Part shown: positions 2,311 to 63,847 of the stretch, one piece after another
Layout: every line of letters begins with the position of its first letter
Numbering within the stretch: the stretch's first letter is position 1
Virus record (IMG/VR): IMGVR_UViG_3300030329_004647
Span: 62,001-126,000 of that record
Reading direction: 5' to 3' (one strand)
DNA: 64,000 bases
Notes under the pieces: model-generated
Told to the model about the DNA's origin: nothing
Databases searched by the model: none
The model's input: only the letters and a program-made list of their open reading frames with translations
Program-made: the position numbers and the translations under genes

Positions 2311-2332
2311 TAAACAAATCTATTTATACTAT

Positions 2333-2740
2333 ATGAGACCCGATGTAGAAAAAGCAATACAAAAATACCTTAACTCTCCCGATGGAGACATTAAGAGAAT
2401 TTACCCTGTAATTGATAGAATTGATTTTAATCATAGGAAACATCAACCAGACATTGATGTTTATGATGGTAAGATAGCTTATCATGACGGTAATTATGTT
2501 ACTATGGATTTATATCTTAATACCCCTCCAATGGAAGAACCTCCTAGTATTGATGATTTATGGTCTCTTTATAATCTTGATGAACATTACCTAATGGATT
2601 ACCACATGCCTAGAATATATAGATTGTTTGGTCTTGATAACTTTTCTTATATGACAAACGTATATATACCCAATACTGAAGGAGGTTATCACAATATGAG
2701 AGAGATTAATAATAGAGGCAACATTGTAACAGAGAAGTAG
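2333..2740 (+). CDS. hypothetical protein
   Basis: ORF track; TATTTATA at 2321-2328. Confidence 0.75.
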   Translation: MRPDVEKAIQKYLNSPDGDIKRIYPVIDRIDFNHRKHQPDIDVYDGKIAYHDGNYVTMDLYLNTPPMEEPPSIDDLWSLYNLDEHYLMDYHMPRIYRLFGLDNFSYMTNVYIPNTEGGYHNMREINNRGNIVTEK

Positions 2741-2765
2741 ATATTTATAACTAAAAATTAATATT

Positions 2766-3056
2766 ATGAAAAAAATTAAACTAACAGAAGCAGATTTAGT
2801 TACTCTTGTAGAAAGAGTGATTAAAGAAGATGGACATACAGATATTCCATCTGCTATTAGAAAATGTAAACTAATAATGGATGATGCTGGAGATATCATG
2901 GAAAAGTTAATAGAACTAAGTGAAACTGGAGGAAGTCTTCCTTCTTGGTGGATGGATAAAGTAACTTTGGCAGCGGACTACCTCAACAAAGCTGATGACT
3001 ATATCAACACTACTAGTCATGTACACGAACAAACCAAAAAGAAAAATGTTAAGTAA
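2766..3056 (+). CDS. hypothetical virion-associated protein with class B leader (MKKIKLTEADLVTLVERVIKE)
   Basis: Leader motif; C-terminal LPSWWMDKVTLAADYL motif resembles a conserved T4-like phage small domain; TATTTATA at 2742-2749. Confidence 0.75.
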   Translation: MKKIKLTEADLVTLVERVIKEDGHTDIPSAIRKCKLIMDDAGDIMEKLIELSETGGSLPSWWMDKVTLAADYLNKADDYINTTSHVHEQTKKKNVK

Positions 3057-3138
3057 CATGACGGAAAAGTCTTGGGGCATACTTGTTATGAGTATTTTAT
3101 CTATAGCACTTATGGTCTATACTTGTATAACGTTGTAA
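3046..3138 (+). CDS. small membrane peptide (30 aa)
   Basis: Hand translation MLSNMTEKSWGILVMSILSIALMVYTCITL; fills the gap between neighbouring ORFs. Confidence 0.4.
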   Translation: MLSNMTEKSWGILVMSILSIALMVYTCITL

Positions 3139-3147
3139 ATAGAGTAT

Positions 3148-3444
3148 ATGAATCAACCTACATACCAAATTTTATTTTATTTATTAGTGTTTTTCCACCA
3201 CGTTTTTATAATACTAACAATATTAACACCGTTCTATGTTACTTTTAACGAACCTTTCTGGATATGGGTTCCTATTAACATATGGATTACACATCTAATG
3301 TTTTCCCCAGTTTTGGTTTGTCCTGCTACTATATGGGAAAACAGATTACGTAGAAGGTTAAACAAACCAGAAATTAAAACCTTTTTTCTTCACTATTATA
3401 TTAAACCCATAAAAAAACTATTAATTGAATGGGTGGTAAAATAG
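3148..3444 (+). CDS. DUF2784-like membrane protein
   Basis: HHVFIIL hydrophobic N-terminus and CPATIWENRLR motif. Confidence 0.65.
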   Translation: MNQPTYQILFYLLVFFHHVFIILTILTPFYVTFNEPFWIWVPINIWITHLMFSPVLVCPATIWENRLRRRLNKPEIKTFFLHYYIKPIKKLLIEWVVK

Positions 3445-3698
3445 CCATGATTATTATATTATTTGGTTCTTTTATTCTAATGTTTAAATTTATCTTCTGG
3501 ATTGTGGATATGTTTGATGGTGACTGAGAAACGCGACCCTATTCTGACAATTAGTCTAAAACCCTAAAAAAGAATTTTCAGAAAAATTTAGGAAAATACG
3601 CTATTTTTTATGAGTCCGGAACCGGAATCGACTTCGTCGTGACCCCCGACCCCCCTTTTTTTGGTTGATTATCTATAGTTGATTGATATTTATTTTAT

Positions 3699-5297: not shown

Positions 5298-5318
5298 TAA
5301 AAAATATATTTATATAAT

Positions 5319-5835: not shown

Positions 5836-5870
5836 TACTTAACTTATATTTATAATAAAACATTAAAATT

Positions 5871-6376: not shown

Positions 6377-6414
6377 ATGCTAATTTTTATATTTATTTAT
6401 AAAGAAATACTATC

Positions 6415-10258: not shown

Positions 10259-10657
10259 TCAGTGATTTCTTTTACCATCGAATACACATACAAATACCAA
10301 ATCTTCGATATCACTTTTATTCCACACTTTATGAAAAGCCCCATCGGGAATCATTAATATATCCCCACCTCTAACTTTATAATCCATAGCACCAATCATC
10401 ATTTCACCATGACCACTTACAAAATGATATACTTCTTCTTGACCTTCATGGGAATGACCTGTAGTCTCTTTATTAGGGTGTAAAACGGTTTTCGATATTA
10501 CAAGATTTTCTAAACTATTATTATCCACTAGTGTATAAGTTTCATTTTCTTTAACTATTTTACTATCTGTTCTGTCTAATTTTATTTTCATTCCATTAAT
10601 TTTTTTATAAAAGCTATAATTAATACAACCAAACCAACAGGCCATATTAACAAACAT
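10259..10657 (-). CDS. cupin domain protein
   Basis: GHSHEGQEEVYHFVSGHG...GDILMIPDGAFHKV cupin motifs; the start is probably the internal MKIKLD. Confidence 0.85.
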   Translation of the reverse strand: MFVNMACWFGCINYSFYKKINGMKIKLDRTDSKIVKENETYTLVDNNSLENLVISKTVLHPNKETTGHSHEGQEEVYHFVSGHGEMMIGAMDYKVRGGDILMIPDGAFHKVWNKSDIEDLVFVCVFDGKRNH

Positions 10658-10836
10658 ACGACCTTATCAAAATTTGTTAGATTATCCCAACTAGCTCTCA
10701 CCTCCCAATGTGTTTTACCTAATGTAAAAACAAGGAGTTCTATAAAGAACATGAAGATTAATCCATAAAATAAGTAATTAATTAAAAAGGTCATAATACA
10801 ATATAAATAAAAATGCTTAAATAATAAAACGTTCAT
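10588..10836 (-). CDS. hypothetical membrane protein
   Basis: Hydrophobic; likely start at 10794, with TATTTATA (minus) at 10802-10809. Confidence 0.55.
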   Translation of the reverse strand: MNVLLFKHFYLYCIMTFLINYLFYGLIFMFFIELLVFTLGKTHWEVRASWDNLTNFDKVVCLLIWPVGLVVLIIAFIKKLME

Positions 10837-10876
10837 TCTTTAATTAATTGATATTTATAATAAAAACATATTAAAA

Positions 10877-11309: not shown

Positions 11310-11370
11310 GCTTAAAGCAAAAGCATTTTATTCTATATTTTCCTAATATTTATTAAATAAAGAAACTACT

Positions 11371-12506: not shown

Positions 12507-12538
12507 TTTGGTATTATTGAAACAAATTATTATCTTTG
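12507..12538 (+). promoter_or_regulatory. Bacteroidota sigma-A-type promoter
   Basis: TTTG (12507-12510), N20, TATCTTTG (12531-12538). Confidence 0.75.
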
Positions 12539-12873: not shown

Positions 12874-13413
12874 TTAAGACATTTCATCATCTATATCTTC
12901 TAATTCTTCTGGTTCTTCTACTTCTGGAAATGGTAATGGGTTTGAAACATCATCATAAGTTCTAGCAGCTCTTTGGTCTCTTCCAGACCCGACAAGTTCC
13001 GCGGTATAAGTCATAAAATTATTAATTTTAGTTAAAGTGTTAGCGATTTGTTTTCTGGTTCTAGAATCTTTAACGTAAGTGTAAGCTCTTTTTATGTTGT
13101 CTATGATATTTTCTATACCTTCCGCTGCAGCATGACCAGGATTTCTATCATATTGACCCTGTTCTAATAACACCTCTTGATAATCAGATAAATTTAACTT
13201 AGCTGTACCCTCTCTTAAAATAGATTGAGAGACCAATCTATAAGTTTTATTTATATCTTCATATAATTCTTCTAGTCGTTGAACGTCTGACTTAATAGCT
13301 GTTGGAGCTGGGTTGTACTTTTTACCGGTACCATCCATTCTTGACATCCACTTTTTAATACCCTTTACTTCTGATTCAGTAATGGTTGATGTTGTTTTTA
13401 ATTTACGATTCAT
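12874..13413 (-). CDS. hypothetical protein with divergent class A leader (ITESEVKGIKKWM)
   Basis: Internal ILRE and LLEQ sites; TATTTATA on the minus strand at 13449-13456. Confidence 0.75.
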   Translation of the reverse strand: MNRKLKTTSTITESEVKGIKKWMSRMDGTGKKYNPAPTAIKSDVQRLEELYEDINKTYRLVSQSILREGTAKLNLSDYQEVLLEQGQYDRNPGHAAAEGIENIIDNIKRAYTYVKDSRTRKQIANTLTKINNFMTYTAELVGSGRDQRAARTYDDVSNPLPFPEVEEPEELEDIDDEMS

Positions 13414-13477
13414 TTTTTAAGATTTATTATTTCTCTTATTACTATTCTTATAAATATAAGATAAAACGAAAGAATAA

Positions 13478-13509
13478 TTTGTTTATATCCTAATTTTTAT
13501 TTATCTTTG
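13478..13509 (+). promoter_or_regulatory. Bacteroidota sigma-A-type promoter
   Basis: TTTG (13478-13481), N20, TATCTTTG (13502-13509). Confidence 0.75.
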
Positions 13510-13528
13510 TATTACAAATATAAATAAG

Positions 13529-16282: not shown

Positions 16283-16373
16283 TTTTAAGATAGATAATTG
16301 TATAGTTATTATGACATAATTTAGATAGATACTAGATATTTATCAATAGAACACATTAAAATATTCAAAAAAG

Positions 16374-17843: not shown

Positions 17844-18233
17844 ATGATAGTATATACACAAGAAAACTGTAAATTCTGTAAAGAACTTATAGATGAATTA
17901 ACAGAAAAAGAATACGAGTTCACACCAATAGACATTAATAAAGATGAGTATAGAGACGAATGGTTAAGAACCACAAGACTTACACTTATGCCTATGACAC
18001 CAACAGTTAAAATTAACGATGATATTTTATGTGCTGGTAGAGATTTTAGAGACGCTGCTCACTTTATAAAAATCTTAGAAAATATAGATGTTCATACAAA
18101 CCTAACACTAGAAGAAAGAATTTTTAGTATAGAGAGTAGTTTAAAAAATTTACAAATGACGGTAGGTAGGATAAATACCATTCTTAGTAGAGCTTCTCAA
18201 CCACAAGCACCACAAAAAAATATTAAGGAATAA
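17844..18233 (+). CDS. glutaredoxin-like protein with C-terminal coiled coil
   Basis: VYTQENCKFC (CxxC) and TPTVKIN. Confidence 0.8.
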   Translation: MIVYTQENCKFCKELIDELTEKEYEFTPIDINKDEYRDEWLRTTRLTLMPMTPTVKINDDILCAGRDFRDAAHFIKILENIDVHTNLTLEERIFSIESSLKNLQMTVGRINTILSRASQPQAPQKNIKE

Positions 18234-18675
18234 AAGAATCAACGTCGTCACCGAAAGTTAAGGTAACACATCTTTTACTATTCTTTTTAATTAAAATGTA
18301 CTGGCGCTCATTACAAATTAGAAGATTTTTATTTACATCCATAACAACTAAGTATTCTGGAGAACCAAGAACGTTTATTTTTTTTCTAACTATAGTTAAC
18401 AAATCTTCCATAGAATTTGTTTTTAATTTTTTTACCACACTTCCATCATAAAATTTTATAGTGTAATATTTTTTAGTTTTATAATTATCTATAAAATAAT
18501 CTTCATCGTGATAATCCACGGTAGAAAAAGAAGTGAGATAATTATCTAAAACATTGGTTAGATTATTTGGTACATTTACAGTGGTATCTATAACCTCTGG
18601 GTTGGATTGTGAATACGATATTGTTGACATCAACAACATAGTTAAAATTAGGGTGTTTTTTAGCATTTTTTTCAT
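18223..18675 (-). CDS. hypothetical secreted protein
   Basis: Signal-peptide-like N-terminus ending SYSQ; sigma-A promoter at 18703-18734. Confidence 0.7.
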   Translation of the reverse strand: MKKMLKNTLILTMLLMSTISYSQSNPEVIDTTVNVPNNLTNVLDNYLTSFSTVDYHDEDYFIDNYKTKKYYTIKFYDGSVVKKLKTNSMEDLLTIVRKKINVLGSPEYLVVMDVNKNLLICNERQYILIKKNSKRCVTLTFGDDVDSFIP

Positions 18676-18702
18676 AATTAATATTTTTTATAAGTGATAC
18701 TA

Positions 18703-18734
18703 CAAAGATAATAAAAAAATCTTAAATAAACAAA
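18703..18734 (-). promoter_or_regulatory. Bacteroidota sigma-A-type promoter
   Basis: TTTG (18734-18731), N20, TATCTTTG (18710-18703). Confidence 0.75.
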
Positions 18735-18749
18735 AGATATTTATATAAA

Positions 18750-20297: not shown

Positions 20298-20691
20298 ATA
20301 ACTTTTTCTTACCCCCATCATAAACATAAGCATGACCCTCAGTAATTAATTGTTGATTAATACAGATTTCTTTACCTTCCTTATCTTGAATAAAAATATC
20401 AGCTAATACTCTACCGTACTTACCAACCCCATGAGACCTTAACCTAAAATAACCAGACTTACTTGAAACCTCTTCTAGTAATTCTTTTGTTCGTTCTTTG
20501 GCTAACAAACCCTTTTTCTTTTCCTCGAGATTTCTAGTTCTTGATTCCCAAGTATCGATACCTTTAAATCTAATTCTTTTTTTAAACCAGATGTCAAATC
20601 CAACATCAATAAGAGCGTCTATGGTATCACCATCAACAACCCTGTCTAATTTTCCTCTGTAAATATATTTTTCCATAACTTGTTTACCCAA
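20287..20691 (-). CDS. thermonuclease (SNase-like) family protein
   Basis: RVVDGDTID, RIRFKGIDTWE, GKYGRVLAD; likely start ATG 20676. Confidence 0.9.
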   Translation of the reverse strand: MGKQVMEKYIYRGKLDRVVDGDTIDALIDVGFDIWFKKRIRFKGIDTWESRTRNLEEKKKGLLAKERTKELLEEVSSKSGYFRLRSHGVGKYGRVLADIFIQDKEGKEICINQQLITEGHAYVYDGGKKKLFKG

Positions 20692-20702
20692 TAAATAGTA
20701 AA

Positions 20703-21254: not shown

Positions 21255-21337
21255 TATAAATTATACTTACTAATAAATTATACTTAATATGCTTGTTAAG
21301 GTAAAGTACTATAATGTCGATATATTTATATAGTGAT

Positions 21338-22903: not shown

Positions 22904-22957
22904 ATTGTATTACTGTCCATTATAAAGATATTGGTATATTTATAATAAAAAACACTC

Positions 22958-23703: not shown

Positions 23704-23761
23704 AAATCCACATATTGTCTAAGTAGTCGATATTTATTAGGTAGAATCAAACTTAATAAAA

Positions 23762-24109: not shown

Positions 24110-24139
24110 TTAGAAAGTATTTATAAAAAAAGTGTAACT

Positions 24140-28543: not shown

Positions 28544-28744
28544 TTATAATGTTTGAGGGTCAACATTATTTTTTTCTTCATCTTTTTTAGCTTTAGCTTC
28601 CTCCATTGTTTTTTTATATGTTTCCATTAGAGTTTCCCTCATCTGCTCCATTTTCTTCATTGAAGCGTTTGCCTCCTGTAATTTTCTACTCTTCCAGGAA
28701 GCTAATTTTTTCTTGTGATTTTTTCTATGTCTTGATTTTGGCAT
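28544..28744 (-). CDS. small basic helical protein upstream of tmRNA
   Basis: MPKSRHRKNHKKKLASWKSRK...; sigma-A promoter at 28765-28796. Confidence 0.75.
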   Translation of the reverse strand: MPKSRHRKNHKKKLASWKSRKLQEANASMKKMEQMRETLMETYKKTMEEAKAKKDEEKNNVDPQTL

Positions 28745-28796: not shown

Positions 28797-28812
28797 TATT
28801 TATTAAAAGAAT

Positions 28813-33945: not shown

Positions 33946-33970
33946 TTATATTTATAATAAAACCTTTAAA

Positions 33971-40923: not shown

Positions 40924-40969
40924 ATATACGTTACTTTAGAAGTATTTATATTTATAGTAAAACGTTTAC

Positions 40970-44648: not shown

Positions 44649-44696
44649 GATTACTTTTTATACTAAAAAAAGTATTTATAAAAAAAGGAAAATAAT

Positions 44697-48996: not shown

Positions 48997-49022
48997 AACA
49001 ATTATCTAAGTATTTATAGGTA

Positions 49023-50765: not shown

Positions 50766-50804
50766 TATGTTCACTATTTATTATTAATATATTATATTAT
50801 AGAC

Positions 50805-52640: not shown

Positions 52641-52661
52641 TATTTATTAGAAAACAACATT

Positions 52662-53870: not shown

Positions 53871-53938
53871 CCACCAACTTTTTTAATAGTTTCAATGTAT
53901 TTATAATATGAATAACAAAAGATAAAAAAATATAACAT

Positions 53939-54514: not shown

Positions 54515-54544
54515 CACTAAACCCACCCAATTTAATAATATCAA

Positions 54545-54570
54545 ATAAAAGCCCTTTAAGGGCTTTTATT
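54545..54570 (+). terminator. intrinsic terminator
   Basis: ATAAAAGCCC-TTTA-AGGGCTTTTATT. Confidence 0.8.
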
Positions 54571-54601
54571 TTGCCCAAAGTATTTATTGAAAAAGAATTA
54601 T

Positions 54602-55303: not shown

Positions 55304-55401
55304 AAAATTACTTCTATTAATTCATTAACACTAACTTTTTTAGAAAATAAATGTATTTATAGAAGCATAAACTGTATAAACTAACATAAAAACGAAAGTA
55401 T

Positions 55402-56823
55402 ATGTCAAAAGAATCTTTAATAGAACAAGCACTGCTCGAGGCTGAACAGTTGGAAAATACTATGAGGTCTAACGCAAAAGAAATACTTGCTTCAACAATG
55501 AAGGAAGAAATTGGAGAGTTAGTACAAGAATCGTTAGCTGAGAAAGACGATTACCTTAAGGAGCAAACAGAAGAGGACATTGAAGACGAGACTTTAGATT
55601 TTGAAGGGTCAGATGATGACGCTGAAGAAATGGAAATGTCTGTCGAAATTCCTGATTTAGAAGATGAGATGGAGGACGATGAACTCGCACCTCTTGATTT
55701 AACCTCAGCAACTGACGACGAAGTCATAAAAGTATTTAAAGCCATGGGTGATGAAGATGGTATCATTGTTAAAAAAGACGAAGATGAAATTTCATTACAA
55801 GATGGTGAAGATGAGTACTTAATAAAATTAGAAGAAAACAAAAATATGAAAACAAAAAAATCTAATTTAAAAGAAATGGAAAAAGAAATGGAAGTTGACG
55901 AATTAATGATGGATGAGGAATCACCAGAAACTGATGAAACAACTGAAATGGAAGAAGAAGTTATGTATGAAATCGAATTATCTGATGAAGATGAGGATAA
56001 ATCAGAAGAAACTAAAGAAGACGCACACGAAGAAGAGATGGAAGAAGGTCACATGCACCACAAATTTAAGCAAGGTTACGACGCTAGACAAGATGACTCA
56101 CTGGGAGATTTAGATGGACCAGAAAGTAGTTATTCACAATCTTTTGCAGACCGTAGACGTGAAAGAGAAGGTATGAGAAAATCTGCCAGAAGAACTCCAG
56201 ACATGTTAAACGCGGGTAAAAAAGAAGTGGGTGAAATGGTTCGCCAAAATAACCTAGGTCAAAAAGTCCATGCTGGTAACAGAAGTAATTCTTACAACAA
56301 AGCTGCTAGAAAAAAATCTGGAATTCATTTACCAGAATCTAGAAGAAAGAAAGCTAGAATTTCTGAAAGAGCTAGAAAGGTTGCACAAAAATCTTCAGTA
56401 TCTAAAAACTACGGTCAACTTAAAGAAGAAATTACTGGATTAAAATCTAAGAATTTTGAATATAAGAAGGCTTTATCGTCATTTAGGGACAAATTAAACG
56501 AGGTAGGAGTATTCAATTCCAACTTAGCTTACGCAACTAGATTGTTCACTGAACATTCTACAACTAAACAGGAGAAGATTAATATTCTTAAAAGATTTGA
56601 CAACGTCCAATCTTTAAAAGAATCTAAATCACTCTATAAGGTAATCAAAGAGGAGTTATCGACTGTTAAATCTCCGAAAACTAAAAAAACAATTTCGGAA
56701 GCAGTTGAAAAACGAATCAACAAATCCCCAAGAAGCGGAAGTAAGAGTAAACTAACTGAAAGTAAAGTTTACGAAAACCCACAATTCTCAAGGATTAAAG
56801 ACTTAATTAATAAAATAAACTAA
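55402..56823 (+). CDS. prohead core / scaffold protein (T4 gp22-like)
   Basis: Position between protease and MCP; acidic coiled coil with many [LI]-x-E sites; LNEVGVFNSNLAYATRLF. Confidence 0.8.
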   Translation: MSKESLIEQALLEAEQLENTMRSNAKEILASTMKEEIGELVQESLAEKDDYLKEQTEEDIEDETLDFEGSDDDAEEMEMSVEIPDLEDEMEDDELAPLDLTSATDDEVIKVFKAMGDEDGIIVKKDEDEISLQDGEDEYLIKLEENKNMKTKKSNLKEMEKEMEVDELMMDEESPETDETTEMEEEVMYEIELSDEDEDKSEETKEDAHEEEMEEGHMHHKFKQGYDARQDDSLGDLDGPESSYSQSFADRRREREGMRKSARRTPDMLNAGKKEVGEMVRQNNLGQKVHAGNRSNSYNKAARKKSGIHLPESRRKKARISERARKVAQKSSVSKNYGQLKEEITGLKSKNFEYKKALSSFRDKLNEVGVFNSNLAYATRLFTEHSTTKQEKINILKRFDNVQSLKESKSLYKVIKEELSTVKSPKTKKTISEAVEKRINKSPRSGSKSKLTESKVYENPQFSRIKDLINKIN

Positions 56824-56837
56824 AAAAATAAAAAAAC

Positions 56838-58670
56838 ATGGGAGCATTATTAGAATCCGGAATGGTTGGTAACATTGGGTTAAAACACCTAAAAGTTATC
56901 AAAGAGGATACAATTAATAAATGGGACAAATTAGGTTTCCTTGATGGCCTTAAAGGTCATGGAAGAGAAAACATTGCTCAGCTTTTTGAAAATCAGGCAA
57001 CTCATTTAATCAATGAGGCGACTGCAGCTGACAACTCAGGTTCTTTCGAAACTGTAGTTTTCCCTATTATTAGAAGAGTATTCTCAAAATTATTAGCTAA
57101 CGAAATCGTATCTGTACAGGCAATGAACTTACCAATTGGTAAATTATTCTACTTCGTACCAAAAGTATCAAGTAGAGTTGGTGAGGGTGGTATGTATGAA
57201 GGTTTCGCTCCATTTGGAGCACCAGGTGCACCGGCAACACAAACGCCAAGTTCACCTACATCAGCTACAACAATAAACTTATATGACAACTTCTACGCAA
57301 CTAACGCACCAATGGGTGCTGAAGATGGTCTTTATGACATCTCAAAAGGTTCGTACTCAGGTTATATCACAACTAATCTACAAGTTATGGACTGGAACGC
57401 TTCAGCTCGTACTTTAGGTTATGCTGCGACTAACTCTACAACTGTAACGTCATTAACATCAACAACTGATTGTTTAAAATCTGTGATTATTGGAGTTACT
57501 GGATTCCAGTCAACAGGTGAAGGTAAATTAATCGGACCGATGGGTAACGAAATAGATACTGAAGATTTCTTATCTTCTTTAACTTTAATTACTGAAAACG
57601 CTACAACTTGTAAGTCAGGTTCAACTAACTATAACGCTGGTGACAACATGTTATTCAGAGTTGTTACTCAAAAATACGGTAGGTCAATTGCGAACCCAAC
57701 AAGTTCGAAAACATCTACAGCTTTCCCTGGTGGAGACTTTGACAGTATTTGTGATGTAACAGGTACAATTTACTTAGAGGCTGACCTTTCGTGTCCAGCT
57801 TGTATTAATTGTGACTCTGTAGACGGATATGTTTGTTCATACTACGCAAATCGTGAGTTCCAAAATGAAACATCACCATTTAGTGCAGCGTGGAGAGTTT
57901 ACAAAGACCTAGAATTTGAAGAAAAAATGGGTGAAGTTTCTTTCGACCTTGAATCTGTTACAGTTTCGGTTACTGAAAGAAAATTAAGAGCTCAATGGTC
58001 ACCAGAGCTTGCACAAGACGTGTCAGCATTCCATAATATCGACGCTGAAGCTGAGTTAACTGCTTTACTTTCTGAAGAAGTTGCTGCTGAAATCGATAGA
58101 GAAATCTTAAGAGACCTTAGAAAAGGAGCAGCTTGGGATTTAAGATGGGATTACAATGGATGGAAGAGATTCCAATCAGGTCAAGCACCATATACTCAAA
58201 AAGACTGGAATCAAACGTTAATCACTGCGGTTAACCAAATTTCAGCTCAGATTCACAAATCTACATTGAGAGGTGGAGCTAACTGGATTGTTTGTTCTTC
58301 TGAGGTATCTGCAATATTTGATGACTTGGAGTACTTCCACGTGTCAAATGCAGCACCAGACCAAGACCAATACAACATGGGTATTGAAAAAGTTGGAACT
58401 CTAGGAGGTAGATATACTGTATATAGAGACCCTTATTTCCCACCTAACCAATTATTACTTGGTCACAAGGGAACGTCATTACTTGACACAGGGTATGTTT
58501 ACGCACCGTATGTACCGTTACAATTAACACCAACAATGTATAATCCATTTAACTTTACACCAATCAAGGGTATCATGACTAGATACGCTAAGAAAATGGT
58601 TAACAACCGTTTCTATGGTAGAGTTACTATCGATGGAGTTAAAACATTCGATGTTAAAGAGTTAAGATAA
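56838..58670 (+). CDS. major capsid protein (T4 gp23-like)
   Basis: IVSVQAMNLP, RKLRAQWSPELAQD, EIDREILRDL, YAPYVPL, GIMTRY. Confidence 0.96.
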   Translation: MGALLESGMVGNIGLKHLKVIKEDTINKWDKLGFLDGLKGHGRENIAQLFENQATHLINEATAADNSGSFETVVFPIIRRVFSKLLANEIVSVQAMNLPIGKLFYFVPKVSSRVGEGGMYEGFAPFGAPGAPATQTPSSPTSATTINLYDNFYATNAPMGAEDGLYDISKGSYSGYITTNLQVMDWNASARTLGYAATNSTTVTSLTSTTDCLKSVIIGVTGFQSTGEGKLIGPMGNEIDTEDFLSSLTLITENATTCKSGSTNYNAGDNMLFRVVTQKYGRSIANPTSSKTSTAFPGGDFDSICDVTGTIYLEADLSCPACINCDSVDGYVCSYYANREFQNETSPFSAAWRVYKDLEFEEKMGEVSFDLESVTVSVTERKLRAQWSPELAQDVSAFHNIDAEAELTALLSEEVAAEIDREILRDLRKGAAWDLRWDYNGWKRFQSGQAPYTQKDWNQTLITAVNQISAQIHKSTLRGGANWIVCSSEVSAIFDDLEYFHVSNAAPDQDQYNMGIEKVGTLGGRYTVYRDPYFPPNQLLLGHKGTSLLDTGYVYAPYVPLQLTPTMYNPFNFTPIKGIMTRYAKKMVNNRFYGRVTIDGVKTFDVKELR

Positions 58671-58691: not shown

Positions 58692-58720
58692 AAAAACCCC
58701 TCTTCGGAGGGGTTTTTTTT
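58692..58720 (+). terminator. intrinsic terminator after MCP
   Basis: AAAAACCCCTC-TTCG-GAGGGGTTTTTTTT. Confidence 0.93.
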
Positions 58721-58759
58721 ATGCATCTTAAAGTATTTATATTAAAAGAACTTAAAATT

Positions 58760-61327
58760 ATGCCACAATTTAATATATCATCCGAAGAAAGGAATAGAAT
58801 TAGAGGTTTACACATTACAGAATCTAAAGATAAAAGAATCACTTCAGTCTTAAATGAAGCTAAGGCTTTAGAAGGTTGGTTCGGAAAAATGTTTGGTGGG
58901 AAAAAAAGAAAAGAAGACATATACAACATTCTTAAAGCCGGTGTACAAATTGGTAGTCCCCCACTCTATTTAGAAGATAGAAAAGAAAACCCTCCATATT
59001 ATACTGAAGAAGAAATTAAAAGATTCGCTAATTTCATGAATAAGTTAGATAGAGTTTTTGTTAATGAAAAAAAGGTAATAGAACTATTAAGAACAGGTGT
59101 GGGATTAGGACTAGAGGAATTGGATATATTAACAAGGATTTTATACGCGTCATCTACTGACCCAGAAAAACCACAAAATTTTACTGACGTGTTGGTGGCA
59201 TCAGGAGCATTTAATGAAAGAGAAAGTTACAATCTAGATAGAATATTAGATACTAATCTATCAGATTTAATGAAAAAAACAAAAAAACAAGATATTAAGA
59301 AACGAGACTGTATCGATACAAATCCATTTGATAAAGAGAATGAACCAAGAGAGTGGGCATGGTGTGACAACAAACTTAACCCAGAGGGTGATGTGCAAGA
59401 AACAGAAGATAGTTACGATTATCAGTTAAGTGAAGTTAATAGAATACGCGAGATAATGGGCCTTAAAATATTGACGGAACAAAAAGTAGGTAGTGTTATT
59501 ATGGTAGATGGGAGAGAAATGGAAGTTGTAGATTATATAAAACAAGAATTACCACCAATAAACGTAGGACAACAATTTGGGTCTGGACTGTATAATGTGA
59601 GTGGTGAGGTTAAAAAATCTTTAGATGGTCTAGTTAATAAAATGAAAAATTTCTTTAATAGAAAAGAAGTACAGGGAATAGTTTTTGATATAGACCTAGA
59701 AGGTGGAGCTTCACTAGTTCCAATCTCAGATGCGTTAGCAAGAAAATACGGTATAAGTACTAGTCTGTCTGATGCAGATAGAAATAAGTGGTTAGCTGGA
59801 AAAAGAGCTTCAGAAGTTAAAAAATATTTGGAAGCACAATTAGGTCAACTAGGAAACGTACAAATACCAGAACCAACAGTTACATTAGGTACAACAAAAT
59901 GGGATAAAAATAAAGGAGTTAATCACAAAGACTATACAGAAGAACAGTTTATGAATATTACTGTTAAAGCTGCGGGTAAAAGACAAGTATTAGAGGCTTT
60001 ACCAGCATTCTGTGAAAAAGGATTTGAACCAGAACAGGGAGGATTAGGTGACCCAAAAAGAGCATATAAGGTTTATAAAGGAAGAGGAAAAAAATTAAAT
60101 TTAGGTGCGGGAGAAGGTAAAATATGTTTATCATTTGACGCATTAACCGTTCCAGATATGTTTGAATTAACCTATAACGGAAAAACATATAGAAGTATGA
60201 ACTCAAAGACAGGTAAAGCTGGATTCATATCAGGTAAGTATGATGAGATATCTGAAGAAGAGTTAGATAAATTTACAGCTATGTTACCCGAAATACAAGA
60301 TGAAATAGCTAAATTAACTGGTGATATACAATTAGCACAAGACGCTTTAGAGTCTGTAGGGCCTGAACAAGAAGCAAAATTAGAAGAAATACTCCTAAAA
60401 CAACAAGAAGAATTAGAAAAAAGTATAGAAGATACCAACAGAAAAATGAAAAAGTATGGGTATAACTTATCAATACCAGTAAAAAATCATAGAAGTAGAA
60501 AAAAATGGGATGATTATATTATGCATTATGGCGACCCTAATACAGGATACCCAAATGCTGTAACACCTAATTGGTATTGGGAAGAAGGTCAATATACGAT
60601 AGATGACACTCCTTTCGCTGGACCTGGTAGTGATAAAAGACCCGAAGAATTTTTTAATATGGCCGACGAAGGAGAAGTAAATGGTGAGTGGTTTAATCGT
60701 TTCTTTAACAAATATAGATATGATAACTCTAAAAAAATTAAAAGAAGTACAGGGTTTAAAACATTGTGGGCAAATAGACCAACTAATAAAGATTGGAAAA
60801 AAGATGATGTTGCAGCCTTTTTCCTTGGTATGAGAAGATTAGAAAAACAACTATTTAGAAATCAAGACGCAAAAAGAGACGAACTAGCTAAGTCTATTAA
60901 AAAAATGAAAAGAGATTACGAAAATAGAATTGAAAACTTATCTAGTAATATTGAAAAAGAAACTCGAAGATTACAAAATGAGTTAAATAAAAATATTAAA
61001 ACACTTAATGATTCTAAAGGAGAAGCTGAACTGTCTAAGAAAATGACAGAGTATAAACTAAGAACAGGTACTAAAGGAATGTACAAGTTTGATGAGTTAT
61101 TAAAAGAAATATTAGCTGATTCGTACGGTGGTAGAAAAAATGTTCCAGATATTATAGGACCTAAAGGTACTATTACTTTTGATAAAGTATTAGGGAAAAA
61201 TGAAGCTTATCTACAAGTTATAGCTCCTATAGGTGGTACATTATGGGCGGTACAAGTAGGTTGTGGTGACAAATGTAAGGGATTAGTTGATAATCCAGTT
61301 ACATATGATAGGGGAACACAAGCTTAA
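58760..61327 (+). CDS. large protein with two class A leaders and an OmpA-like domain
   Basis: MPQFNISSEERNRIRGLHITES; internal LSEVNRIREIMGLKILTEQ; FGSG...IDLEGGAS...NKWLAGKRASEVKKYL. ATG 58760 preferred over 58721. Confidence 0.75.
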   Translation: MPQFNISSEERNRIRGLHITESKDKRITSVLNEAKALEGWFGKMFGGKKRKEDIYNILKAGVQIGSPPLYLEDRKENPPYYTEEEIKRFANFMNKLDRVFVNEKKVIELLRTGVGLGLEELDILTRILYASSTDPEKPQNFTDVLVASGAFNERESYNLDRILDTNLSDLMKKTKKQDIKKRDCIDTNPFDKENEPREWAWCDNKLNPEGDVQETEDSYDYQLSEVNRIREIMGLKILTEQKVGSVIMVDGREMEVVDYIKQELPPINVGQQFGSGLYNVSGEVKKSLDGLVNKMKNFFNRKEVQGIVFDIDLEGGASLVPISDALARKYGISTSLSDADRNKWLAGKRASEVKKYLEAQLGQLGNVQIPEPTVTLGTTKWDKNKGVNHKDYTEEQFMNITVKAAGKRQVLEALPAFCEKGFEPEQGGLGDPKRAYKVYKGRGKKLNLGAGEGKICLSFDALTVPDMFELTYNGKTYRSMNSKTGKAGFISGKYDEISEEELDKFTAMLPEIQDEIAKLTGDIQLAQDALESVGPEQEAKLEEILLKQQEELEKSIEDTNRKMKKYGYNLSIPVKNHRSRKKWDDYIMHYGDPNTGYPNAVTPNWYWEEGQYTIDDTPFAGPGSDKRPEEFFNMADEGEVNGEWFNRFFNKYRYDNSKKIKRSTGFKTLWANRPTNKDWKKDDVAAFFLGMRRLEKQLFRNQDAKRDELAKSIKKMKRDYENRIENLSSNIEKETRRLQNELNKNIKTLNDSKGEAELSKKMTEYKLRTGTKGMYKFDELLKEILADSYGGRKNVPDIIGPKGTITFDKVLGKNEAYLQVIAPIGGTLWAVQVGCGDKCKGLVDNPVTYDRGTQA

Positions 61328-61851
61328 GGGTGAACCAAAATTAATACAGGGTAAGATGTTTGAGCGTAACGTGCTTGAATTACACTAACCGCTCCAATCG
61401 TTAAATTTCCACGACCCTCCAAATCAAATAACATAGCTTTTCTATGTCCTGGAGAATTAATCCAGTCATTAACTACTTGACGACATTCCTTTTCTAAATC
61501 AAGAGGCTCGTCAGTCCATGAATACAAAGGCAATCCAGCCATACATTCGGTACCCCAAGAATATGTACCACAATATTTTTTAATTCTCATTTGAGGGTCA
61601 TTTATTTCTTCATGTCCTTTTACATCAACAGTTTCACTATGTGAAAAATTTACTTCTTTATATGTCATGTAACTTGCGTGGTGATAAGCAGCTTTATAAG
61701 CGTCATTAGACCACTCTACGGCCTCCAAACCCTGTGATACCCTATATTCGTTTACCATTCTAAAAATAATTTGTTCTGCCTCACCTATACGTTGTTGTCC
61801 GTAAGAAGTAAAAGTTAAAATAGTAAGTAAGATTGTTATTAGTTTTTTCAT
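61324..61851 (-). CDS. secreted CAP (SCP-like) domain protein
   Basis: Signal peptide; IFRMVNEYRVSQGL, HHASYM, FSH, WINSPGHRKAML. Confidence 0.88.
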   Translation of the reverse strand: MKKLITILLTILTFTSYGQQRIGEAEQIIFRMVNEYRVSQGLEAVEWSNDAYKAAYHHASYMTYKEVNFSHSETVDVKGHEEINDPQMRIKKYCGTYSWGTECMAGLPLYSWTDEPLDLEKECRQVVNDWINSPGHRKAMLFDLEGRGNLTIGAVSVIQARYAQTSYPVLILVHP

Positions 61852-61855
61852 ACTA

Positions 61856-61886
61856 CAAATATAATAAATTTATTTTAAACTACAAA
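61856..61886 (-). promoter_or_regulatory. Bacteroidota sigma-A-type promoter (likely leaderless)
   Basis: TTTG, N19, TATATTTG, TAGT, ATG. Confidence 0.8.
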
Positions 61887-61944
61887 GATAATTGTAAGTA
61901 ATTATACGAGTTATTTTAAAGATAGTTTCAGATATTTATAATGT

Positions 61945-63204
61945 ATGAAGAGTAATTTATTATCTGAAATTAATCGTTTAAGGGGCATTATGGGTTTAAA
62001 GTTAATCCAAGAACAAGTCCAGTCACCACCTTATGACCTATATACCCAATGGGAAGGTTCTGGTGGAAAAGTTATAACATCTAAGGAATGGAGTGATAAA
62101 AAAATATTTAAAGCAGGTTTTATAAATTACATAGGTCCTTTTGGAGATAGAGGTTATGTTGTTTTAATGCCTGGTACAAAATATGTAGATGGAATTGGTG
62201 AGATATCTTCACCTGTTGTAAATTCTAAATACCCTCCTATCGGAGGAAATGTGGACAACCAATTATTTAAAATAGAAGATAGAAAATTTAGACCTGGTCA
62301 AAATAAAGTGTATGGGGGTGATTTGAAGTGGGCTGAAGGAAACCCACAAATTGACTTTATGAAATATCAAAATAACGATTTATGGGAGTTAGGCAGTCAA
62401 GCTAAAGCTTTACAATCTGATATGAATAGAGGTGGTGGTCAGACTAAAACTAGATTTCATTTTTTAGCTTACTCTCAAAGAACTAATGGTAACTTAAGAA
62501 TTCTAAACATAAATATTAGATTAAAAAACATAAAAGAATTAGAAGCAGAGGGTAAAACAGACAATACAAAAAAAGGTACTTTAAGCATTAACAATTATGT
62601 AAAACAACGTGGTGGTAATGCATGGCACTTAGAATATGGTTCAGCACCGTTAGCGACTTATGGACCTGGAAACATTAGTATAGAGGAAGATTTACCAGAA
62701 TTTGTTACCGACGAATACCAGTTTGATGCTGGTGAAAATTTTGATTTCGATTCTGCAGTTCTAACTCAATTAGCTAAAGACGCCATCAAAGAAAAAATTA
62801 TTGACGCTATAAATGAATTAGGAGAATATAAAAGTGCTTATTTAAAAGAATTAGGTAAAAAACCCGTAATAATCACAGCTTACTCTTCTATCGACGCAGA
62901 TTCTGAAACACCAGGTGGTGGTGGTGATTTTGGACCATGTCAAAGTATTAAAAAATCAGGAAAACGAAAAGATTATAATAAATGCCTTAGTCAATATAGA
63001 GCTAATACAGTTGTAAAACATCTCCAAGATAATTATTCGGATATATTTGGTAATGTTAAATTAAAAGGTATTGGAGGTGGTGAAAACCCATCTAAAAATA
63101 GTTGGAAACCAGGAAAAAAGAATCATGACTCTAAAACAACCCAAAAAGACCGTAAGTTTACAATTAAATTACCAGGATTTACTATACGAAGAAAAGTAGG
63201 TTAA
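61945..63204 (+). CDS. OmpA-like C-terminal domain protein with class A leader
   Basis: LLSEINRLRGIMGLKLIQEQ; FDFDSAVL...ITAYSSID...YNKCLSQYRANTVVKHL...GGGE...DRKFTI. Confidence 0.85.
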   Translation: MKSNLLSEINRLRGIMGLKLIQEQVQSPPYDLYTQWEGSGGKVITSKEWSDKKIFKAGFINYIGPFGDRGYVVLMPGTKYVDGIGEISSPVVNSKYPPIGGNVDNQLFKIEDRKFRPGQNKVYGGDLKWAEGNPQIDFMKYQNNDLWELGSQAKALQSDMNRGGGQTKTRFHFLAYSQRTNGNLRILNINIRLKNIKELEAEGKTDNTKKGTLSINNYVKQRGGNAWHLEYGSAPLATYGPGNISIEEDLPEFVTDEYQFDAGENFDFDSAVLTQLAKDAIKEKIIDAINELGEYKSAYLKELGKKPVIITAYSSIDADSETPGGGGDFGPCQSIKKSGKRKDYNKCLSQYRANTVVKHLQDNYSDIFGNVKLKGIGGGENPSKNSWKPGKKNHDSKTTQKDRKFTIKLPGFTIRRKVG

Positions 63205-63785
63205 TAAATGTAATTTCTTGATATTTGAAAGGAAGAGTATATAGCAAGATGTGTTTTACCCTTCCATGTGAATAAACCTAACTGAGTAGACCCAGAACCA
63301 ATACCCACAATACCATCCCCAACAGAAGCCCAGTTTTTTATGATAATTTGGTGCCCAGGAGAGTTGTCCCAAGAGTTAACTAAATAAGTAGCTAAGTCTT
63401 GGTAAGTGACAAATCTTTCAGAGGACACACATGTTAACATACTTACTTCTGAATATGCATCAACTTCATACTTTAATGTTTTATTTTGGTATTGTGATTG
63501 TATCTCATCATATACATCTACACTTATTTTATTTAATATATGTTTACCTTCAGGATGCCCAGCAGTTTGTTGTTCCACTAAAACACCTGTAATGTATGTA
63601 GATAAATTGTCGTGTAAAACATCAGAATAAACTAACTTTGGATTTCCGTACGATTCACGATAATCATTAATTTCTACAAATACTAAACTATCTATAAGTT
63701 CAGCATTAAAATTATTATAATCAATTACCTGTGAATAGGTTGTTAGTGTTATAAGAGTTAGTAATAATGTAATTAATTTTTTCAT
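63201..63785 (-). CDS. secreted CAP (SCP-like) domain protein, paralog of 61324..61851
   Basis: Near-identical signal peptide MKKLITLLLT...YSQ; INDYRESYG; WDNSPGH. Confidence 0.8.
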   Translation of the reverse strand: MKKLITLLLTLITLTTYSQVIDYNNFNAELIDSLVFVEINDYRESYGNPKLVYSDVLHDNLSTYITGVLVEQQTAGHPEGKHILNKISVDVYDEIQSQYQNKTLKYEVDAYSEVSMLTCVSSERFVTYQDLATYLVNSWDNSPGHQIIIKNWASVGDGIVGIGSGSTQLGLFTWKGKTHLAIYSSFQISRNYIY

Positions 63786-63789
63786 ACTA

Positions 63790-63820
63790 CAAAGATAATA
63801 AATTTTAATTAAACAACAAA
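63790..63820 (-). promoter_or_regulatory. Bacteroidota sigma-A-type promoter (likely leaderless)
   Basis: TTTG, N19, TATCTTTG, TAGT, ATG. Confidence 0.8.
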
Positions 63821-63847
63821 GATATTTATAATAAAAAAAAGAATATT

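What the first reader, a model, noticed from the sequence alone, without database searches (positions are those of the whole stretch)
2321..63830. TATTTAT(A/T) motif before about 28 genes: candidate late promoter that is the reverse complement of the T4 late box
Seen in sequence: TATTTAT[A/T] lies typically 4-30 nt upstream of starts at 2321, 2742, 3687, 5307, 5847, 6394, 10852, 11347, 18738, 21323, 22937, 23731, 24118, 28797, 33949, 40943, 44673, 49011 (terminase), 52641, 53898, 54581 (protease), 55354 (scaffold/MCP), 58734, 61933, 63823. It also occurs in gene-sense orientation on the minus strand (577, 10802, 13449, 20690). It marks head genes and leader-bearing genes. Established: the T4 gp55 late promoter is TATAAATA, the exact reverse complement. 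Inference: a phage-encoded late sigma factor recognising TATTTATA. The genome is AT-rich, so significance needs testing.
Basis: partly seen in the sequence, partly recalled or inferred. Interest (0 to 1): 0.65.

Follow-up and report, generated by a model that had tools for sequence, protein, structure and literature searches.

The report
Phage late-gene promoter box TATTTATA
A short DNA word, TATTTAT(A/T), sits just upstream of about 30 virion and packaging genes in this large T4-like phage and its many relatives; it is most likely the promoter read by a sigma factor the phage encodes, a variant of the T4 late-gene switch.

Summary
The total count in the window is unremarkable (43 vs about 36 expected). 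Placement and strand are not. In spacers between same-strand genes of the 232-kb contig, TATTTAT occurs 46 times in sense and 6 in antisense, against 5-12 expected. ATATTTAT and TATTTATA are the top upstream 8-mers here and in 80 related metagenomic loci.

The box is kept upstream of orthologous protease (43/43) and portal (26/30) genes while the flanks diverge. It precedes terminase, portal, protease, sheath, tube and baseplate genes. It does not precede the polymerase, helicase or ligase genes; the latter two carry Bacteroidota host-type promoters (TAnnTTTG).

There is no -35 element. Spacing to ATG peaks at 4 nt, the host -7 geometry, which implies leaderless mRNAs.

One sigma gene lies 6.9 kb beyond the window: 233 aa, sigma-2 fold, best family match T4 gp55. 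Homologues of this sigma and the same box co-occur in Flavobacterium phage immuto and Microcystis phage Mel-JY01. A canonical-gp55 cyanophage gives NTAAATA instead. gp33 and gp45 were not detected.

No RNA data could be obtained, so timing, start sites and sigma-box recognition remain inferred. I class it as a new variant of a known kind.

The parts
577..584 (-). TATTTATA box, 21 nt before ORF 346-555(-); a host-type TAnnTTTG box lies just upstream
2321..2328 (+). TATTTATA box, 4 nt before ATG 2333 (135 aa); leaderless geometry
2742..2749 (+). TATTTATA box, 16 nt before ATG 2766 (96 aa, N-terminal leader KIKLTE..)
3687..3694 (+). TATTTATT box, 4 nt before ATG 3699 (532 aa, N-terminal leader)
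5307..5314 (+). TATTTATA box, 4 nt before ATG 5319 (111 aa, N-terminal leader)
5847..5854 (+). TATTTATA box, 16 nt before ATG 5871 (149 aa, N-terminal leader)
6390..6401 (+). two overlapping boxes (6390, 6394) after a terminator-like hairpin, 13-17 nt before ATG 6415 (314 aa)
10802..10809 (-). TATTTATA box, 7 nt before ATG of ORF 10588-10794(-)
10852..10859 (+). TATTTATA box, 17 nt before ATG 10877 (108 aa, leader KITLTE..)
11347..11354 (+). TATTTATT box, 16 nt before ATG 11371 (90 aa)
13449..13456 (-). TATTTATA box, 35 nt before ORF 12874-13413(-); back to back with a host-type promoter for 13529(+)
16337..16344 (+). variant TATTTATC box, 29 nt before ATG 16374 (99 aa)
18738..18745 (+). TATTTATA box, 4 nt before GTG 18750 (515 aa); part of a bidirectional cassette with the host-type promoter of 18223-18675(-)
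20690..20697 (-). TATTTATT box, 13 nt before ATG of ORF 20287-20676(-)
21323..21330 (+). TATTTATA box, 7 nt before ATG 21338 (261 aa, N-terminal leader)
22937..22944 (+). TATTTATA box, 13 nt before ATG 22958 (138 aa, leader KIKLTE..)
23731..23738 (+). TATTTATT box, 23 nt before ATG 23762 (115 aa)
24118..24125 (+). TATTTATA box, 14 nt before ATG 24140 (898 aa, N-terminal leader)
28797..28804 (+). TATTTATT box, 8 nt before ATG 28813 (1426 aa); diverges from the host-type promoter of 28544-28744(-)
33949..33956 (+). TATTTATA box, 14 nt before ATG 33971 (268 aa, leader); bidirectional cassette with the leaderless host-type promoter of 33094-33909(-)
40943..40956 (+). two overlapping boxes (40943, 40949) after a GC hairpin plus T-run, 13-19 nt before ATG 40970 (892 aa)
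44673..44680 (+). TATTTATA box, 16 nt before ATG 44697 (133 aa)
49011..49018 (+). TATTTATA box, 4 nt before ATG 49023, large terminase (T4 gp17-like); kept at 3-4 nt in the three closest relatives that carry it (L004, L007, L008)
50775..50782 (+). TATTTATT box, 22 nt before ATG 50805, portal protein; box kept in 26 of 30 relatives
52641..52648 (+). TATTTATT box overlapping the portal stop codon, 13 nt before ATG 52662 (246 aa); kept in 16 of 16 relatives
53898..53905 (+). TATTTATA box, 33 nt before ATG 53939 (191 aa)
54581..54588 (+). TATTTATT box directly after a terminator hairpin (54543-54571), 13 nt before ATG 54602, head maturation protease; kept in 43 of 43 relatives
55354..55361 (+). 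TATTTATA box, 40 nt before ATG 55402 (473 aa, coiled scaffold-like); the major capsid gene 56838-58670 follows with no box of its own (0 of 78 relatives)
58734..58741 (+). TATTTATA box after the terminator at 58699-58720, 18 nt before ATG 58760 (855 aa, N-terminal leader)
61933..61940 (+). TATTTATA box, 4 nt before ATG 61945 (419 aa, N-terminal leader); diverges from tandem host-type promoters of 61324-61851(-)
63823..63830 (+). TATTTATA box, 17 nt before ATG 63848; bidirectional cassette with the host-type promoters of 63201-63785(-)

Best explanation
(A/G)TATTTAT(A/T/C) is the -10-type element of the promoters that drive the virion, packaging and head-internal protein genes of this T4-superfamily jumbo phage.

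The box has no -35 partner. By analogy with the host -7 element it occupies about -12 to -5, so transcription starts 4-6 nt after the 8-mer, usually at an A. Where the ATG lies 4 nt downstream the mRNA is leaderless. Elsewhere the leaders are very short, about 9-13 nt.

The box is read by host core RNA polymerase carrying a phage-encoded sigma factor. That sigma is 233 aa and is encoded at G000:C1:132924-133625 (-), 6.9 kb to the right of the window. Its sigma-2 domain is distantly related to T4 gp55. It has an extra C-terminal helical domain instead of the gp55 clamp-binding tail.

Early and host-takeover genes use ordinary Bacteroidota sigma-A promoters (TTTG-N19-20-TAnnTTTG). The late box differs from the host element at the two near-invariant host positions: A for T at -7 and A for G at -5. 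This would keep the two programmes apart.

Shown here: enrichment, strand and position, conservation, gene classes, presence of the sigma, and co-occurrence of sigma family and box.
For: Enrichment and strand bias:
- Searches give the counts listed under the observation check.
- No -35 signal appears in 60 own sites or in 270 related sites.

Placement:
- The box follows terminator hairpins at 6390, 40943, 54581 and 58734.
- In several divergent spacers it is the only conserved element on its side.

Footprinting in related loci:
- protease 43/43
- gene 52662 16/16
- portal 26/30
- major capsid gene 0/78; it lies inside an operon

Geometry:
- 11 genes have exactly 4 nt between box and ATG.
- The host-type TAnnTTTG boxes of the same genome show the same 4-nt spacing.
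- In Flavobacterium johnsoniae the -7 element spans -12 to -5, with 4-5 nt to the start site (PMC6847099).
- A is 78-81% at the 5th and 6th nt after the box in 270 sites.

Gene classes:
- Box-led genes include terminase, portal, protease, tail sheath, tail tube, baseplate wedge and head-tail adaptor.
- DNA polymerase, helicase, ligase, DnaK, the AAA protease and a kinase-like gene lack the box.

Sigma:
- It is the only sigma-like gene in the contig.
- Its only PHROG match is phrog_234, 'late sigma transcription factor', E = 5e-5.
- The N-terminal domain matches the sigma-2 fold: Z 8-9, rmsd about 3 A over about 90 residues against sigma-E region 2.
- Profile-profile comparison with gp55 gives 70% probability and E = 4e-5 over gp55 residues 40-124, which is its region 2.

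Co-occurrence:
- Homologues of this sigma are present in Flavobacterium phage immuto (hhalign 98.5%) and Microcystis phage Mel-JY01 (tblastn 2e-11).
- Both phages have TATTTAT before terminase, portal and other structural genes.
- In Mel-JY01 the box lies upstream of Shine-Dalgarno leaders.

Control: the same k-mer method on cyanophage S-CRM01, which has a canonical 164-aa gp55, returns CTAAATA/ATAAATA and not TATTTAT.

No phage RNA polymerase was detected with Pfam.
Against: - No transcript data.
- The sigma-box link is correlative, resting on three lineages.
- The match to gp55 is weak: 4.5% probability against T4 gp55 alone and a Pfam Sigma70_r2 score just under the cut-off (23.3 against 24 bits).
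- The sigma gene sits deep in a long operon whose first gene itself carries the box. No host-type promoter was found near it, so how the sigma is first made is open.
- Implied leaders of about 9-13 nt are unusually short. F. johnsoniae averages 33 nt.
- The contig is only about 72% complete. Another sigma or another polymerase could lie in the missing part.
Confidence: 0.7

Rival explanations
1. The box is a variant host-type -7 element read by the host primary sigma (Bacteroidota sigma-A), perhaps after phage modification of the polymerase. No phage sigma is involved.
For: The box shares T-12, A-11, T-8 and T-6 with TAnnTTTG. It has the same 4-nt spacing to leaderless ATGs.
Against: T-7 and G-5 are nearly invariant in host promoters, and both are changed in the box. 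The same genome holds a separate, clean set of full TTTG-N19-20-TAnnTTTG promoters on other genes. The box has no -33 element. The same box occurs in a phage recorded on Microcystis, a different phylum. A phage sigma that co-occurs with the box exists.
Confidence: 0.1
2. The word acts in RNA, not DNA. It could be a translation-initiation enhancer, a processing site that cuts polycistronic RNA before each gene, or the target of a RegA-like translational repressor.
For: It is sense-only, very close to start codons (4-17 nt for most) and AU-rich. Bacteroidota lack Shine-Dalgarno pairing.
Against: It lies directly after intrinsic terminators and in divergent spacers where no upstream same-strand transcript exists. 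Distance to ATG varies from 3 to 40 nt. In Mel-JY01 it lies upstream of Shine-Dalgarno sites at 13-33 nt. The 4-nt class mirrors the host promoter geometry. The highly expressed capsid gene has none (0/78).
Confidence: 0.08
3. The box is read by another phage factor: an undetected phage RNA polymerase, a second sigma in the missing 28% of the genome, or an activator that binds double-stranded DNA.
For: The contig is 72% complete. Many large proteins have no family match. The T7-type Pfam search had no working control.
Against: No beta-prime-type domain was found although the control genomes all matched. The complete genome of immuto has the box and the sigma homologue. The box position and its lack of partners fit a -10-type sigma element.
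Confidence: 0.1
4. Chance: an AT-rich word that happens to be common in AT-rich spacers.
For: The total count in the window is within shuffle expectation. The genome is 32% GC.
Against: 46 sense against 6 antisense in codirectional spacers, with 5-12 expected. 24 of 30 copies of the 9-mer fall in 2.7% of the sequence. The box is conserved at orthologous sites in dozens of diverged relatives.
Confidence: 0.01

Closest known systems
Phage T4 late transcription system (TATAAATA box, gp55 sigma, gp33 co-activator, gp45 sliding clamp)
   Same: An 8-bp AT-only box about one helical turn upstream of the start, with no -35 element and an AT-rich downstream segment. It is placed before virion genes of a phage with T4-type terminase, portal, protease and capsid genes. 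A small phage sigma whose region 2 resembles gp55 region 2 is present (PMC2988020).
   Different: The box reads TATTTATA in the sense strand, not TATAAATA. The two central bases differ, and the T4 word is depleted in sense orientation. The sigma is 233 aa with an extra C-terminal helical domain and lacks the hydrophobic-acidic clamp-binding tail. gp33 and gp45 were not detected here or in the complete immuto and Mel-JY01 genomes. Many mRNAs would be leaderless.
T4-like cyanophage late box (NATAAATA / CTAAATA), shown here in S-CRM01
   Same: Same gene set downstream and the same promoter architecture. It was recovered by the same k-mer method.
   Different: It keeps the T4-type word and a canonical 164-aa gp55. 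TATTTAT is not enriched there.
Bacteroidota primary-sigma promoters (-33 TTTG / -7 TAnnTTTG)
   Same: Same inferred position (-12 to -5), the same 4-nt distance to leaderless start codons in this genome, and shared T-12, A-11, T-8 and T-6.
   Different: A replaces the near-invariant T-7 and G-5. There is no -33 element. The box is used on a different set of genes.
Two-domain (sigma-2 plus sigma-4) alternative sigma factors, group 3/4 (ECF-like), including phage-borne ones such as the RpoE-like candidate late sigma of Sinorhizobium phage PhiM9 (PMC4621102)
   Same: Similar size (about 190-240 aa). The N-terminal domain superposes on sigma-E, SigK and SigW region 2. Full-length alignments to sigma-E, AlgU and SigH cover both halves.
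   Different: No Pfam region-4 match. The C-terminal domain alone gives only Z 5-6 to sigma-4 domains, which is within the noise for helical folds. The promoters show no -35 element that a working sigma-4 would read.

Membership tests
T4-type late promoter system (gp55/gp33/gp45) | Promoter is a single 8-bp box at the -10 region with no -35 element | tested here: met
   No conserved position upstream of the box in 60 own sites and 270 related sites. The box position (-12 to -5) is inferred from the 4-nt spacing to ATG and the host geometry. It is not mapped.
T4-type late promoter system (gp55/gp33/gp45) | Box sequence TATAAATA (or NATAAATA) in the non-template strand | tested here: not met
   The sense-strand word is TATTTAT(A/T/C). 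In codirectional spacers ATAAATA occurs 6 times against 46 for TATTTAT. The control phage S-CRM01 gives CTAAATA/ATAAATA.
T4-type late promoter system (gp55/gp33/gp45) | gp55-family sigma: region 2 only, about 165-185 aa, C-terminal clamp-binding epitope | tested here: inconclusive
   The only PHROG match is phrog_234 (E 5e-5). hhalign to a gp55 pair gives 70% probability and E 4e-5 over region 2, but 4.5% against T4 gp55 alone. The protein is 233 aa with an extra C-terminal domain and no SLDFLYEAND-like tail.
T4-type late promoter system (gp55/gp33/gp45) | gp33 co-activator present | tested here: not met
   phrog_254 has no match in the contig or in the complete immuto and Mel-JY01 genomes. 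gp33 is small and diverges fast, so non-detection is weak evidence of absence.
T4-type late promoter system (gp55/gp33/gp45) | gp45 sliding clamp present, with replication-coupled activation | tested here: not met
   phrog_223 has no match in the contig (72% complete) or in immuto and Mel-JY01. Coupling to replication is not testable with these tools.
T4-type late promoter system (gp55/gp33/gp45) | Drives virion and packaging genes late in infection | tested here: inconclusive
   The gene classes fit (against 45, 60).
Sigma-70 family | Sigma-2 domain (regions 2.1-2.4) | tested here: met
   AlphaFold model with pLDDT 73.5. Residues 7-115 superpose on sigma-E, SigB and SigK region 2 with Z 8.2-9.2 and rmsd about 3 A over 85-106 residues; almost all top rows are sigma factors. 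Pfam Sigma70_r2 scores 23.3 bits, just under the 24-bit cut-off.
Sigma-70 family | Sigma-4 domain with a helix-turn-helix that reads a -35 element | tested here: inconclusive
   The C-terminal model (pLDDT 82) has SigH C-domain as top hit at Z 5.9 and sigma-E region 4 at Z 5.1, within the noise for small helical folds. No Pfam region-4 match. No -35 element in the promoters.
Bacteroidota sigma-A promoter (-33/-7) | TAnnTTTG with near-invariant T-7 and G-5, usually with TTTG at -33 | tested here: not met
   The box has A at both positions and no -33 element. True host-type promoters occur separately in the same genome.

The most novel reading that the evidence does not exclude
A large, environmentally abundant clade of T4-superfamily phages has replaced the split T4 late apparatus (gp55 + gp33 + gp45) with a single two-domain sigma. 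The clade includes Flavobacterium phage immuto, Microcystis phage Mel-JY01 and thousands of marine and freshwater jumbo-phage contigs. The sigma reads TATTTATA at -12 to -5. In Bacteroidota hosts this produces many leaderless late mRNAs. The box is tuned to differ from the host -7 element at only its two critical bases.
Probability: 0.45. Interest if true: 0.65.

Novelty: new variant of a known kind. Interest (0 to 1): 0.55.

Why it matters
T4 late transcription is the textbook case of a promoter reduced to one box and activated by a sliding clamp. The review read here reports highly similar or closely related late consensus boxes in the other T4-related phages examined: KVP40, 44RR, S-PM2 and Aeh1 (PMC2988020).

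Here a T4-like lineage shows a different box, a different-looking sigma, and no detectable gp33 or gp45. The sigma has thousands of environmental homologues, and about 600 related capsid loci are present in IMG/VR.

The result has three practical consequences.
- It gives a usable rule for annotating transcription units and true start codons in these poorly annotated jumbo phages. Several starts in this window are corrected by it.
- Together with the TTTG/TAnnTTTG early promoters, it points to a Bacteroidota host for the contig.
- It makes a question testable in a cultured system (immuto on Flavobacterium sp. LMO8): how does a phage sigma discriminate against a host element that differs at two bases, and how are leaderless late mRNAs translated in a phylum without Shine-Dalgarno pairing?

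Tried and rejected
**Dead ends**
No expression data were obtained.
- Sequence search of the sigma profile against PDB chains gave nothing meaningful: LRRC8 at E 0.03 and SigA1 at E 0.29.
- Foldseek on the full model gave no hit at E <= 0.001, although almost all top rows were sigma factors. VIA-align was needed to see this per domain.
- phrog_12791 (a second late-sigma family) had no match.
- Pfam Sigma70_r4_2 had no match.
- Pfam RNA_pol_Rpb1_2 had no match, with working controls.
- Pfam T7-type RNA_pol had no match, but its control matched nowhere, so this is uninformative.
- A regex for DxDGD catalytic loops gave only unconvincing hits.
- E. coli-type -35/-10 promoters are below shuffle expectation in 40-60 kb of the window: 67 against 84.
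- The C-terminal domain fold is only weakly sigma-4-like.
- No promoter was found near the sigma gene.

**Literature**
Searches for TATTTATA with phage promoters, for late promoters in Bacteroidetes or Flavobacterium T4-like phages, for immuto and for Mel-JY01 found no description of this box.

**Readings considered and rejected**
- Chance in AT-rich DNA.
- The idea that the reverse-complement relation to the T4 box has functional meaning. The T4 word in sense orientation is rare, and most of its copies are simply the other strand of boxes serving divergent genes.

Full report
**What the window is.** The window is bases 62001-126000 of a 232,028-bp IMG/VR viral contig, linear and about 72% complete by CheckV. 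GC is about 32%.
- It encodes a T4 gp17-like large terminase.
- It also encodes a portal, a head maturation protease and a major head protein.
- Elsewhere the contig has a tail sheath, a DNA polymerase and a helicase.
- It also has a tail tube, a baseplate wedge and a head-tail adaptor, and a DNA ligase.
- There is no close cultured relative by nucleotide search.
- About 600 IMG/VR loci encode a capsid protein that is 65-80% identical.

Where the sites lie is special.
- 37 of the 43 sites are on the + strand.
- In the whole contig 65 of 122 sites lie in the 4.6% that is intergenic, and 60 lie 60 nt or less upstream of a same-strand start.
- A blind count of all 8-mers in the 60 nt upstream of 252 called genes puts ATATTTAT (43 genes; 67 copies in the genome) and TATTTATA (38; 64) first. 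Their reverse complements are each found before only 9 genes.
- The 9-mer ATATTTATA has 24 of its 30 copies in the sense-upstream-50 zone, which is 2.7% of the two-strand sequence.
- The cleanest test uses the spacers between codirectional genes (94 spacers, 5,682 nt). Both orientations there share the same composition. TATTTAT occurs 46 times in sense and 6 in antisense (p = 1e-8). Markov models of order 1-3, trained on the very same spacers, expect 5-12.
- By gap class, 6 of 121 genes with a gap under 15 nt have the box, against 23 of 38 with gaps of 15-39 nt.

**Anatomy.**
- Single-base scanning gives the consensus (A/G)-TATTTAT-(A/T/C). G is excluded at the last place and there is essentially no tolerance inside the 7-mer.
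- Nothing is conserved upstream, so there is no -35-like element. This holds in 60 sites of this genome and in 270 non-redundant sites of relatives. Only a weak T-rich patch appears about 14 nt upstream.
- Downstream, A reaches 78-81% at the fifth and sixth nt after the 8-mer.
- The distance to the start codon has a sharp peak at exactly 4 nt (11 genes) and a broad one at 13-17 nt. Relatives show 3-4 and 12-15 nt.
- Several boxes follow a GC hairpin plus T-run directly: 6390, 40943, 54581 and 58734.
- Many others sit in divergent spacers, where transcription must start locally.

**A second promoter class fixes the geometry and the host.** Genes without the box, mostly small minus-strand genes in the window, carry TTTG-N19-20-TA(C/A)(T)TTTG. 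The core often reads TTTATTATCTTTGTAGTATG, with the ATG 4 nt after the G. This is the Bacteroidota primary-sigma promoter. In Flavobacterium johnsoniae the -7 element occupies T-12, A-11, T-8, T-7, T-6 and G-5, with 4-5 nt to the start site (PMC6847099).
- These phage genes would therefore be leaderless.
- The identical 4-nt spacing of TATTTATA to 11 ATGs places that box at -12 to -5 as well.
- Aligned in this way, the box keeps T-12, A-11, T-8 and T-6 of the host element but has A at the two near-invariant host positions -7 and -5.
- Three spacers hold a compact repeated cassette in which a leaderless host-type promoter on the minus strand and a TATTTATA box on the plus strand lie back to back: 18698-18745, 33909-33956 and 63785-63830.

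**Conservation.** In 79 related loci the box is preserved at orthologous positions while the surrounding spacer diverges.
- Before the protease gene: 43 of 43, always 12-14 nt from the ATG.
- Before the gene after the portal: 16 of 16.
- Before the portal: 26 of 30.
- Before the terminase: 5 of 14. In three of the closest relatives it keeps the 3-4-nt leaderless spacing.
- Before the capsid gene: 0 of 78. That gene follows the scaffold-like gene without a gap-promoter.

**Which genes carry the box.**
- With the box: terminase, portal, protease, the scaffold-like 473-aa gene (with the capsid gene behind it), tail sheath (variant TATTTATC), tail tube, baseplate wedge and head-tail adaptor. The group also includes a large set of proteins that share short N-terminal leader peptides. 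These resemble capsid-targeting or protease-cleaved propeptides; that reading is inference.
- Without the box: DNA polymerase, helicase and ligase (the last two with host-type boxes), DnaK, an AAA+ protease and a kinase-like protein.

This is the split expected of late against early or middle genes. No timing data exist.

- A search of the contig with the PHROG family of T4 gp55 found one gene, G000:C1:132924-133625 (-), 233 aa, 6.9 kb beyond the right end of the window.
- That family is its only PHROG match (E 5e-5).
- Pfam sees Sigma70_r2 just below the cut-off, and it is the only such hit in the contig.
- An AlphaFold model (pLDDT 73.5) places residues 7-115 on sigma-2 domains: Z 8.2-9.2 and rmsd about 3 A over 85-106 residues against sigma-E, SigB and SigK. 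Nearly every high-ranking chain is a sigma factor.
- Profile-profile comparison with T4 plus S-CRM01 gp55 gives 70% probability and E 4e-5 over gp55 residues 40-124. That is the segment modelled as region 2.1-2.4 in the T4 literature.
- The C-terminal 95 residues fold confidently (pLDDT 82). They resemble sigma-4 domains only weakly (Z 5-6).
- The gp55 clamp-binding tail is absent.
- gp45 (phrog_223) and gp33 (phrog_254) were not found in the contig, nor in two complete related genomes.
- No beta-prime-like polymerase domain was found.

**Co-occurrence across phages.** The sigma has thousands of unannotated environmental homologues on contigs of up to 424 kb.
- Among cultured phages, BLAST finds it only in Microcystis phage Mel-JY01.
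- A profile search also finds it in Flavobacterium phage immuto: 240-aa ORF, hhalign 98.5%.
- In immuto, TATTTAT is the top upstream 7-mer in a 41-kb structural region. It precedes the terminase (after a terminator), portal, tail fibre and structural genes, but not the primase.
- In Mel-JY01, TATTTAT precedes the terminase, the portal-position gene and five others. There it sits 13-33 nt upstream of ATGs that have Shine-Dalgarno sites. This argues for a phage-borne specificity rather than a Bacteroidota host one.
- As a control, the same script on cyanophage S-CRM01, which has a canonical 164-aa gp55, returns CTAAATA (11 of 14 copies upstream) and ATAAATA (6 of 7). That is the T4-type box. TATTTAT appears upstream only once.

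**Relation to T4.** T4 late promoters are an 8-bp box about one helical turn upstream of the start with no -35 element. Position -13 is the first base of the box, which places it at about -13 to -6 for an 8-bp box. Highly similar consensus boxes are reported for KVP40, 44RR and S-PM2, and a closely related one for Aeh1 (PMC2988020).
- The present box is indeed the reverse complement of TATAAATA as a string.
- Because it is used in the sense strand, the useful description is TAT-TT-ATA against TAT-AA-ATA: a change of the two central bases.
- The system works like the T4 late switch: one box and a phage sigma-2.
- It fails three membership features: the box sequence, gp33 and gp45.

**Verdict.** I rate it a new variant of a known kind and of moderate interest. 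No description of this box was found in the searchable literature.

**Limits.**
- Gene calls are my own simple ORF model.
- The related loci are phylogenetically non-independent.
- The contig is incomplete.

Noticed in passing
window 593-625(-), 1642-1673(-), 12508-12538(+), 13478-13509(+), 18703-18734(-), 28765-28796(-), 33914-33945(-), 36627-36657(-), 61856-61886(-), 63790-63820(-): Full Bacteroidota-type promoters (TTTG-N19-20-TAnnTTTG). Several have the ATG exactly 4 nt after the G, which would give leaderless mRNAs. Tandem copies precede 61324-61851(-) and 63201-63785(-). They point to a Bacteroidota host and mark the probable early genes.
   Followed up: partly
window 18698-18745, 33909-33956, 63785-63830 (and 13449-13510 in looser form): A repeated compact bidirectional cassette. 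A leaderless host-type promoter on the minus strand lies back to back with a TATTTATA box on the plus strand. The sequence is similar in all copies.
   Followed up: partly
window ORFs starting at 2766, 10877, 22958, 40970; at 3699, 5319, 5871, 6415, 21338, 24140, 33971, 58760, 61945; genome ORFs starting at 53088, 54728, 209331: Box-led proteins share short N-terminal leader peptides in at least three families: K-I-K-L-T-E-x-x-L-x-x-L-I-E; S-E-S-E-K-x-R-I-R-x-L-H or E-x-N-R-I-K-x-L-M; and L-I-K-K-I-L-R-E. They may be capsid-targeting or protease-cleaved propeptides of head-internal proteins. This was not tested.
   Followed up: no
window 56800-56837 and orthologous sites in L004-L082: The capsid gene has no TATTTAT box. 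It has a conserved A-rich leader containing AAATAAAC about 20-25 nt before the ATG. AAATAAAC is among the top upstream 8-mers of the related loci (73 genes, against 2 for its reverse complement). Its function is unknown.
   Followed up: no
upstream of orthologues of window gene 53442-53870 in L020, L029, L038, L041, L052, L060, L074, L080, L082: A conserved TTTTTGACA word about 50-60 nt before the ATG, followed by a T-rich stretch and AAATAAAC. It may be a third promoter class. It is not present in the window's own copy.
   Followed up: no
window 39041-40897(+) and 36675-38699(-): The phage encodes a DnaK/Hsp70 chaperone, 59-64% identical to copies in 630-735-kb uncultured huge phages. It also encodes a two-AAA+-domain 'ATP-dependent protease' family protein (phrog_4871, 787 bits). 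Neither gene has the late box.
   Followed up: partly
genome 137-163 kb (outside the window, minus strand): A long, tightly packed operon-like block holds two aminotransferases, a glycosyltransferase and a HAD hydrolase fusion, which looks like sugar or surface-polysaccharide metabolism. The sigma gene (132924-133625) lies at the downstream end of the same minus-strand run. No promoter for it was identified.
   Followed up: partly
window 58721 vs 58760; 21314 vs 21338; 18861 vs 18750; 10836 vs 10794(-): The longest-ORF start codons lie upstream of, or inside, the terminator or box. The box position suggests the downstream starts are the real ones.
   Followed up: partly
immuto MW353177 and Mel-JY01 PP395634, whole records: Both complete genomes have T4-like head and tail genes but no detectable gp45-type clamp or gp33. 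The replication and late-activation modules of this clade may differ from T4.
   Followed up: partly
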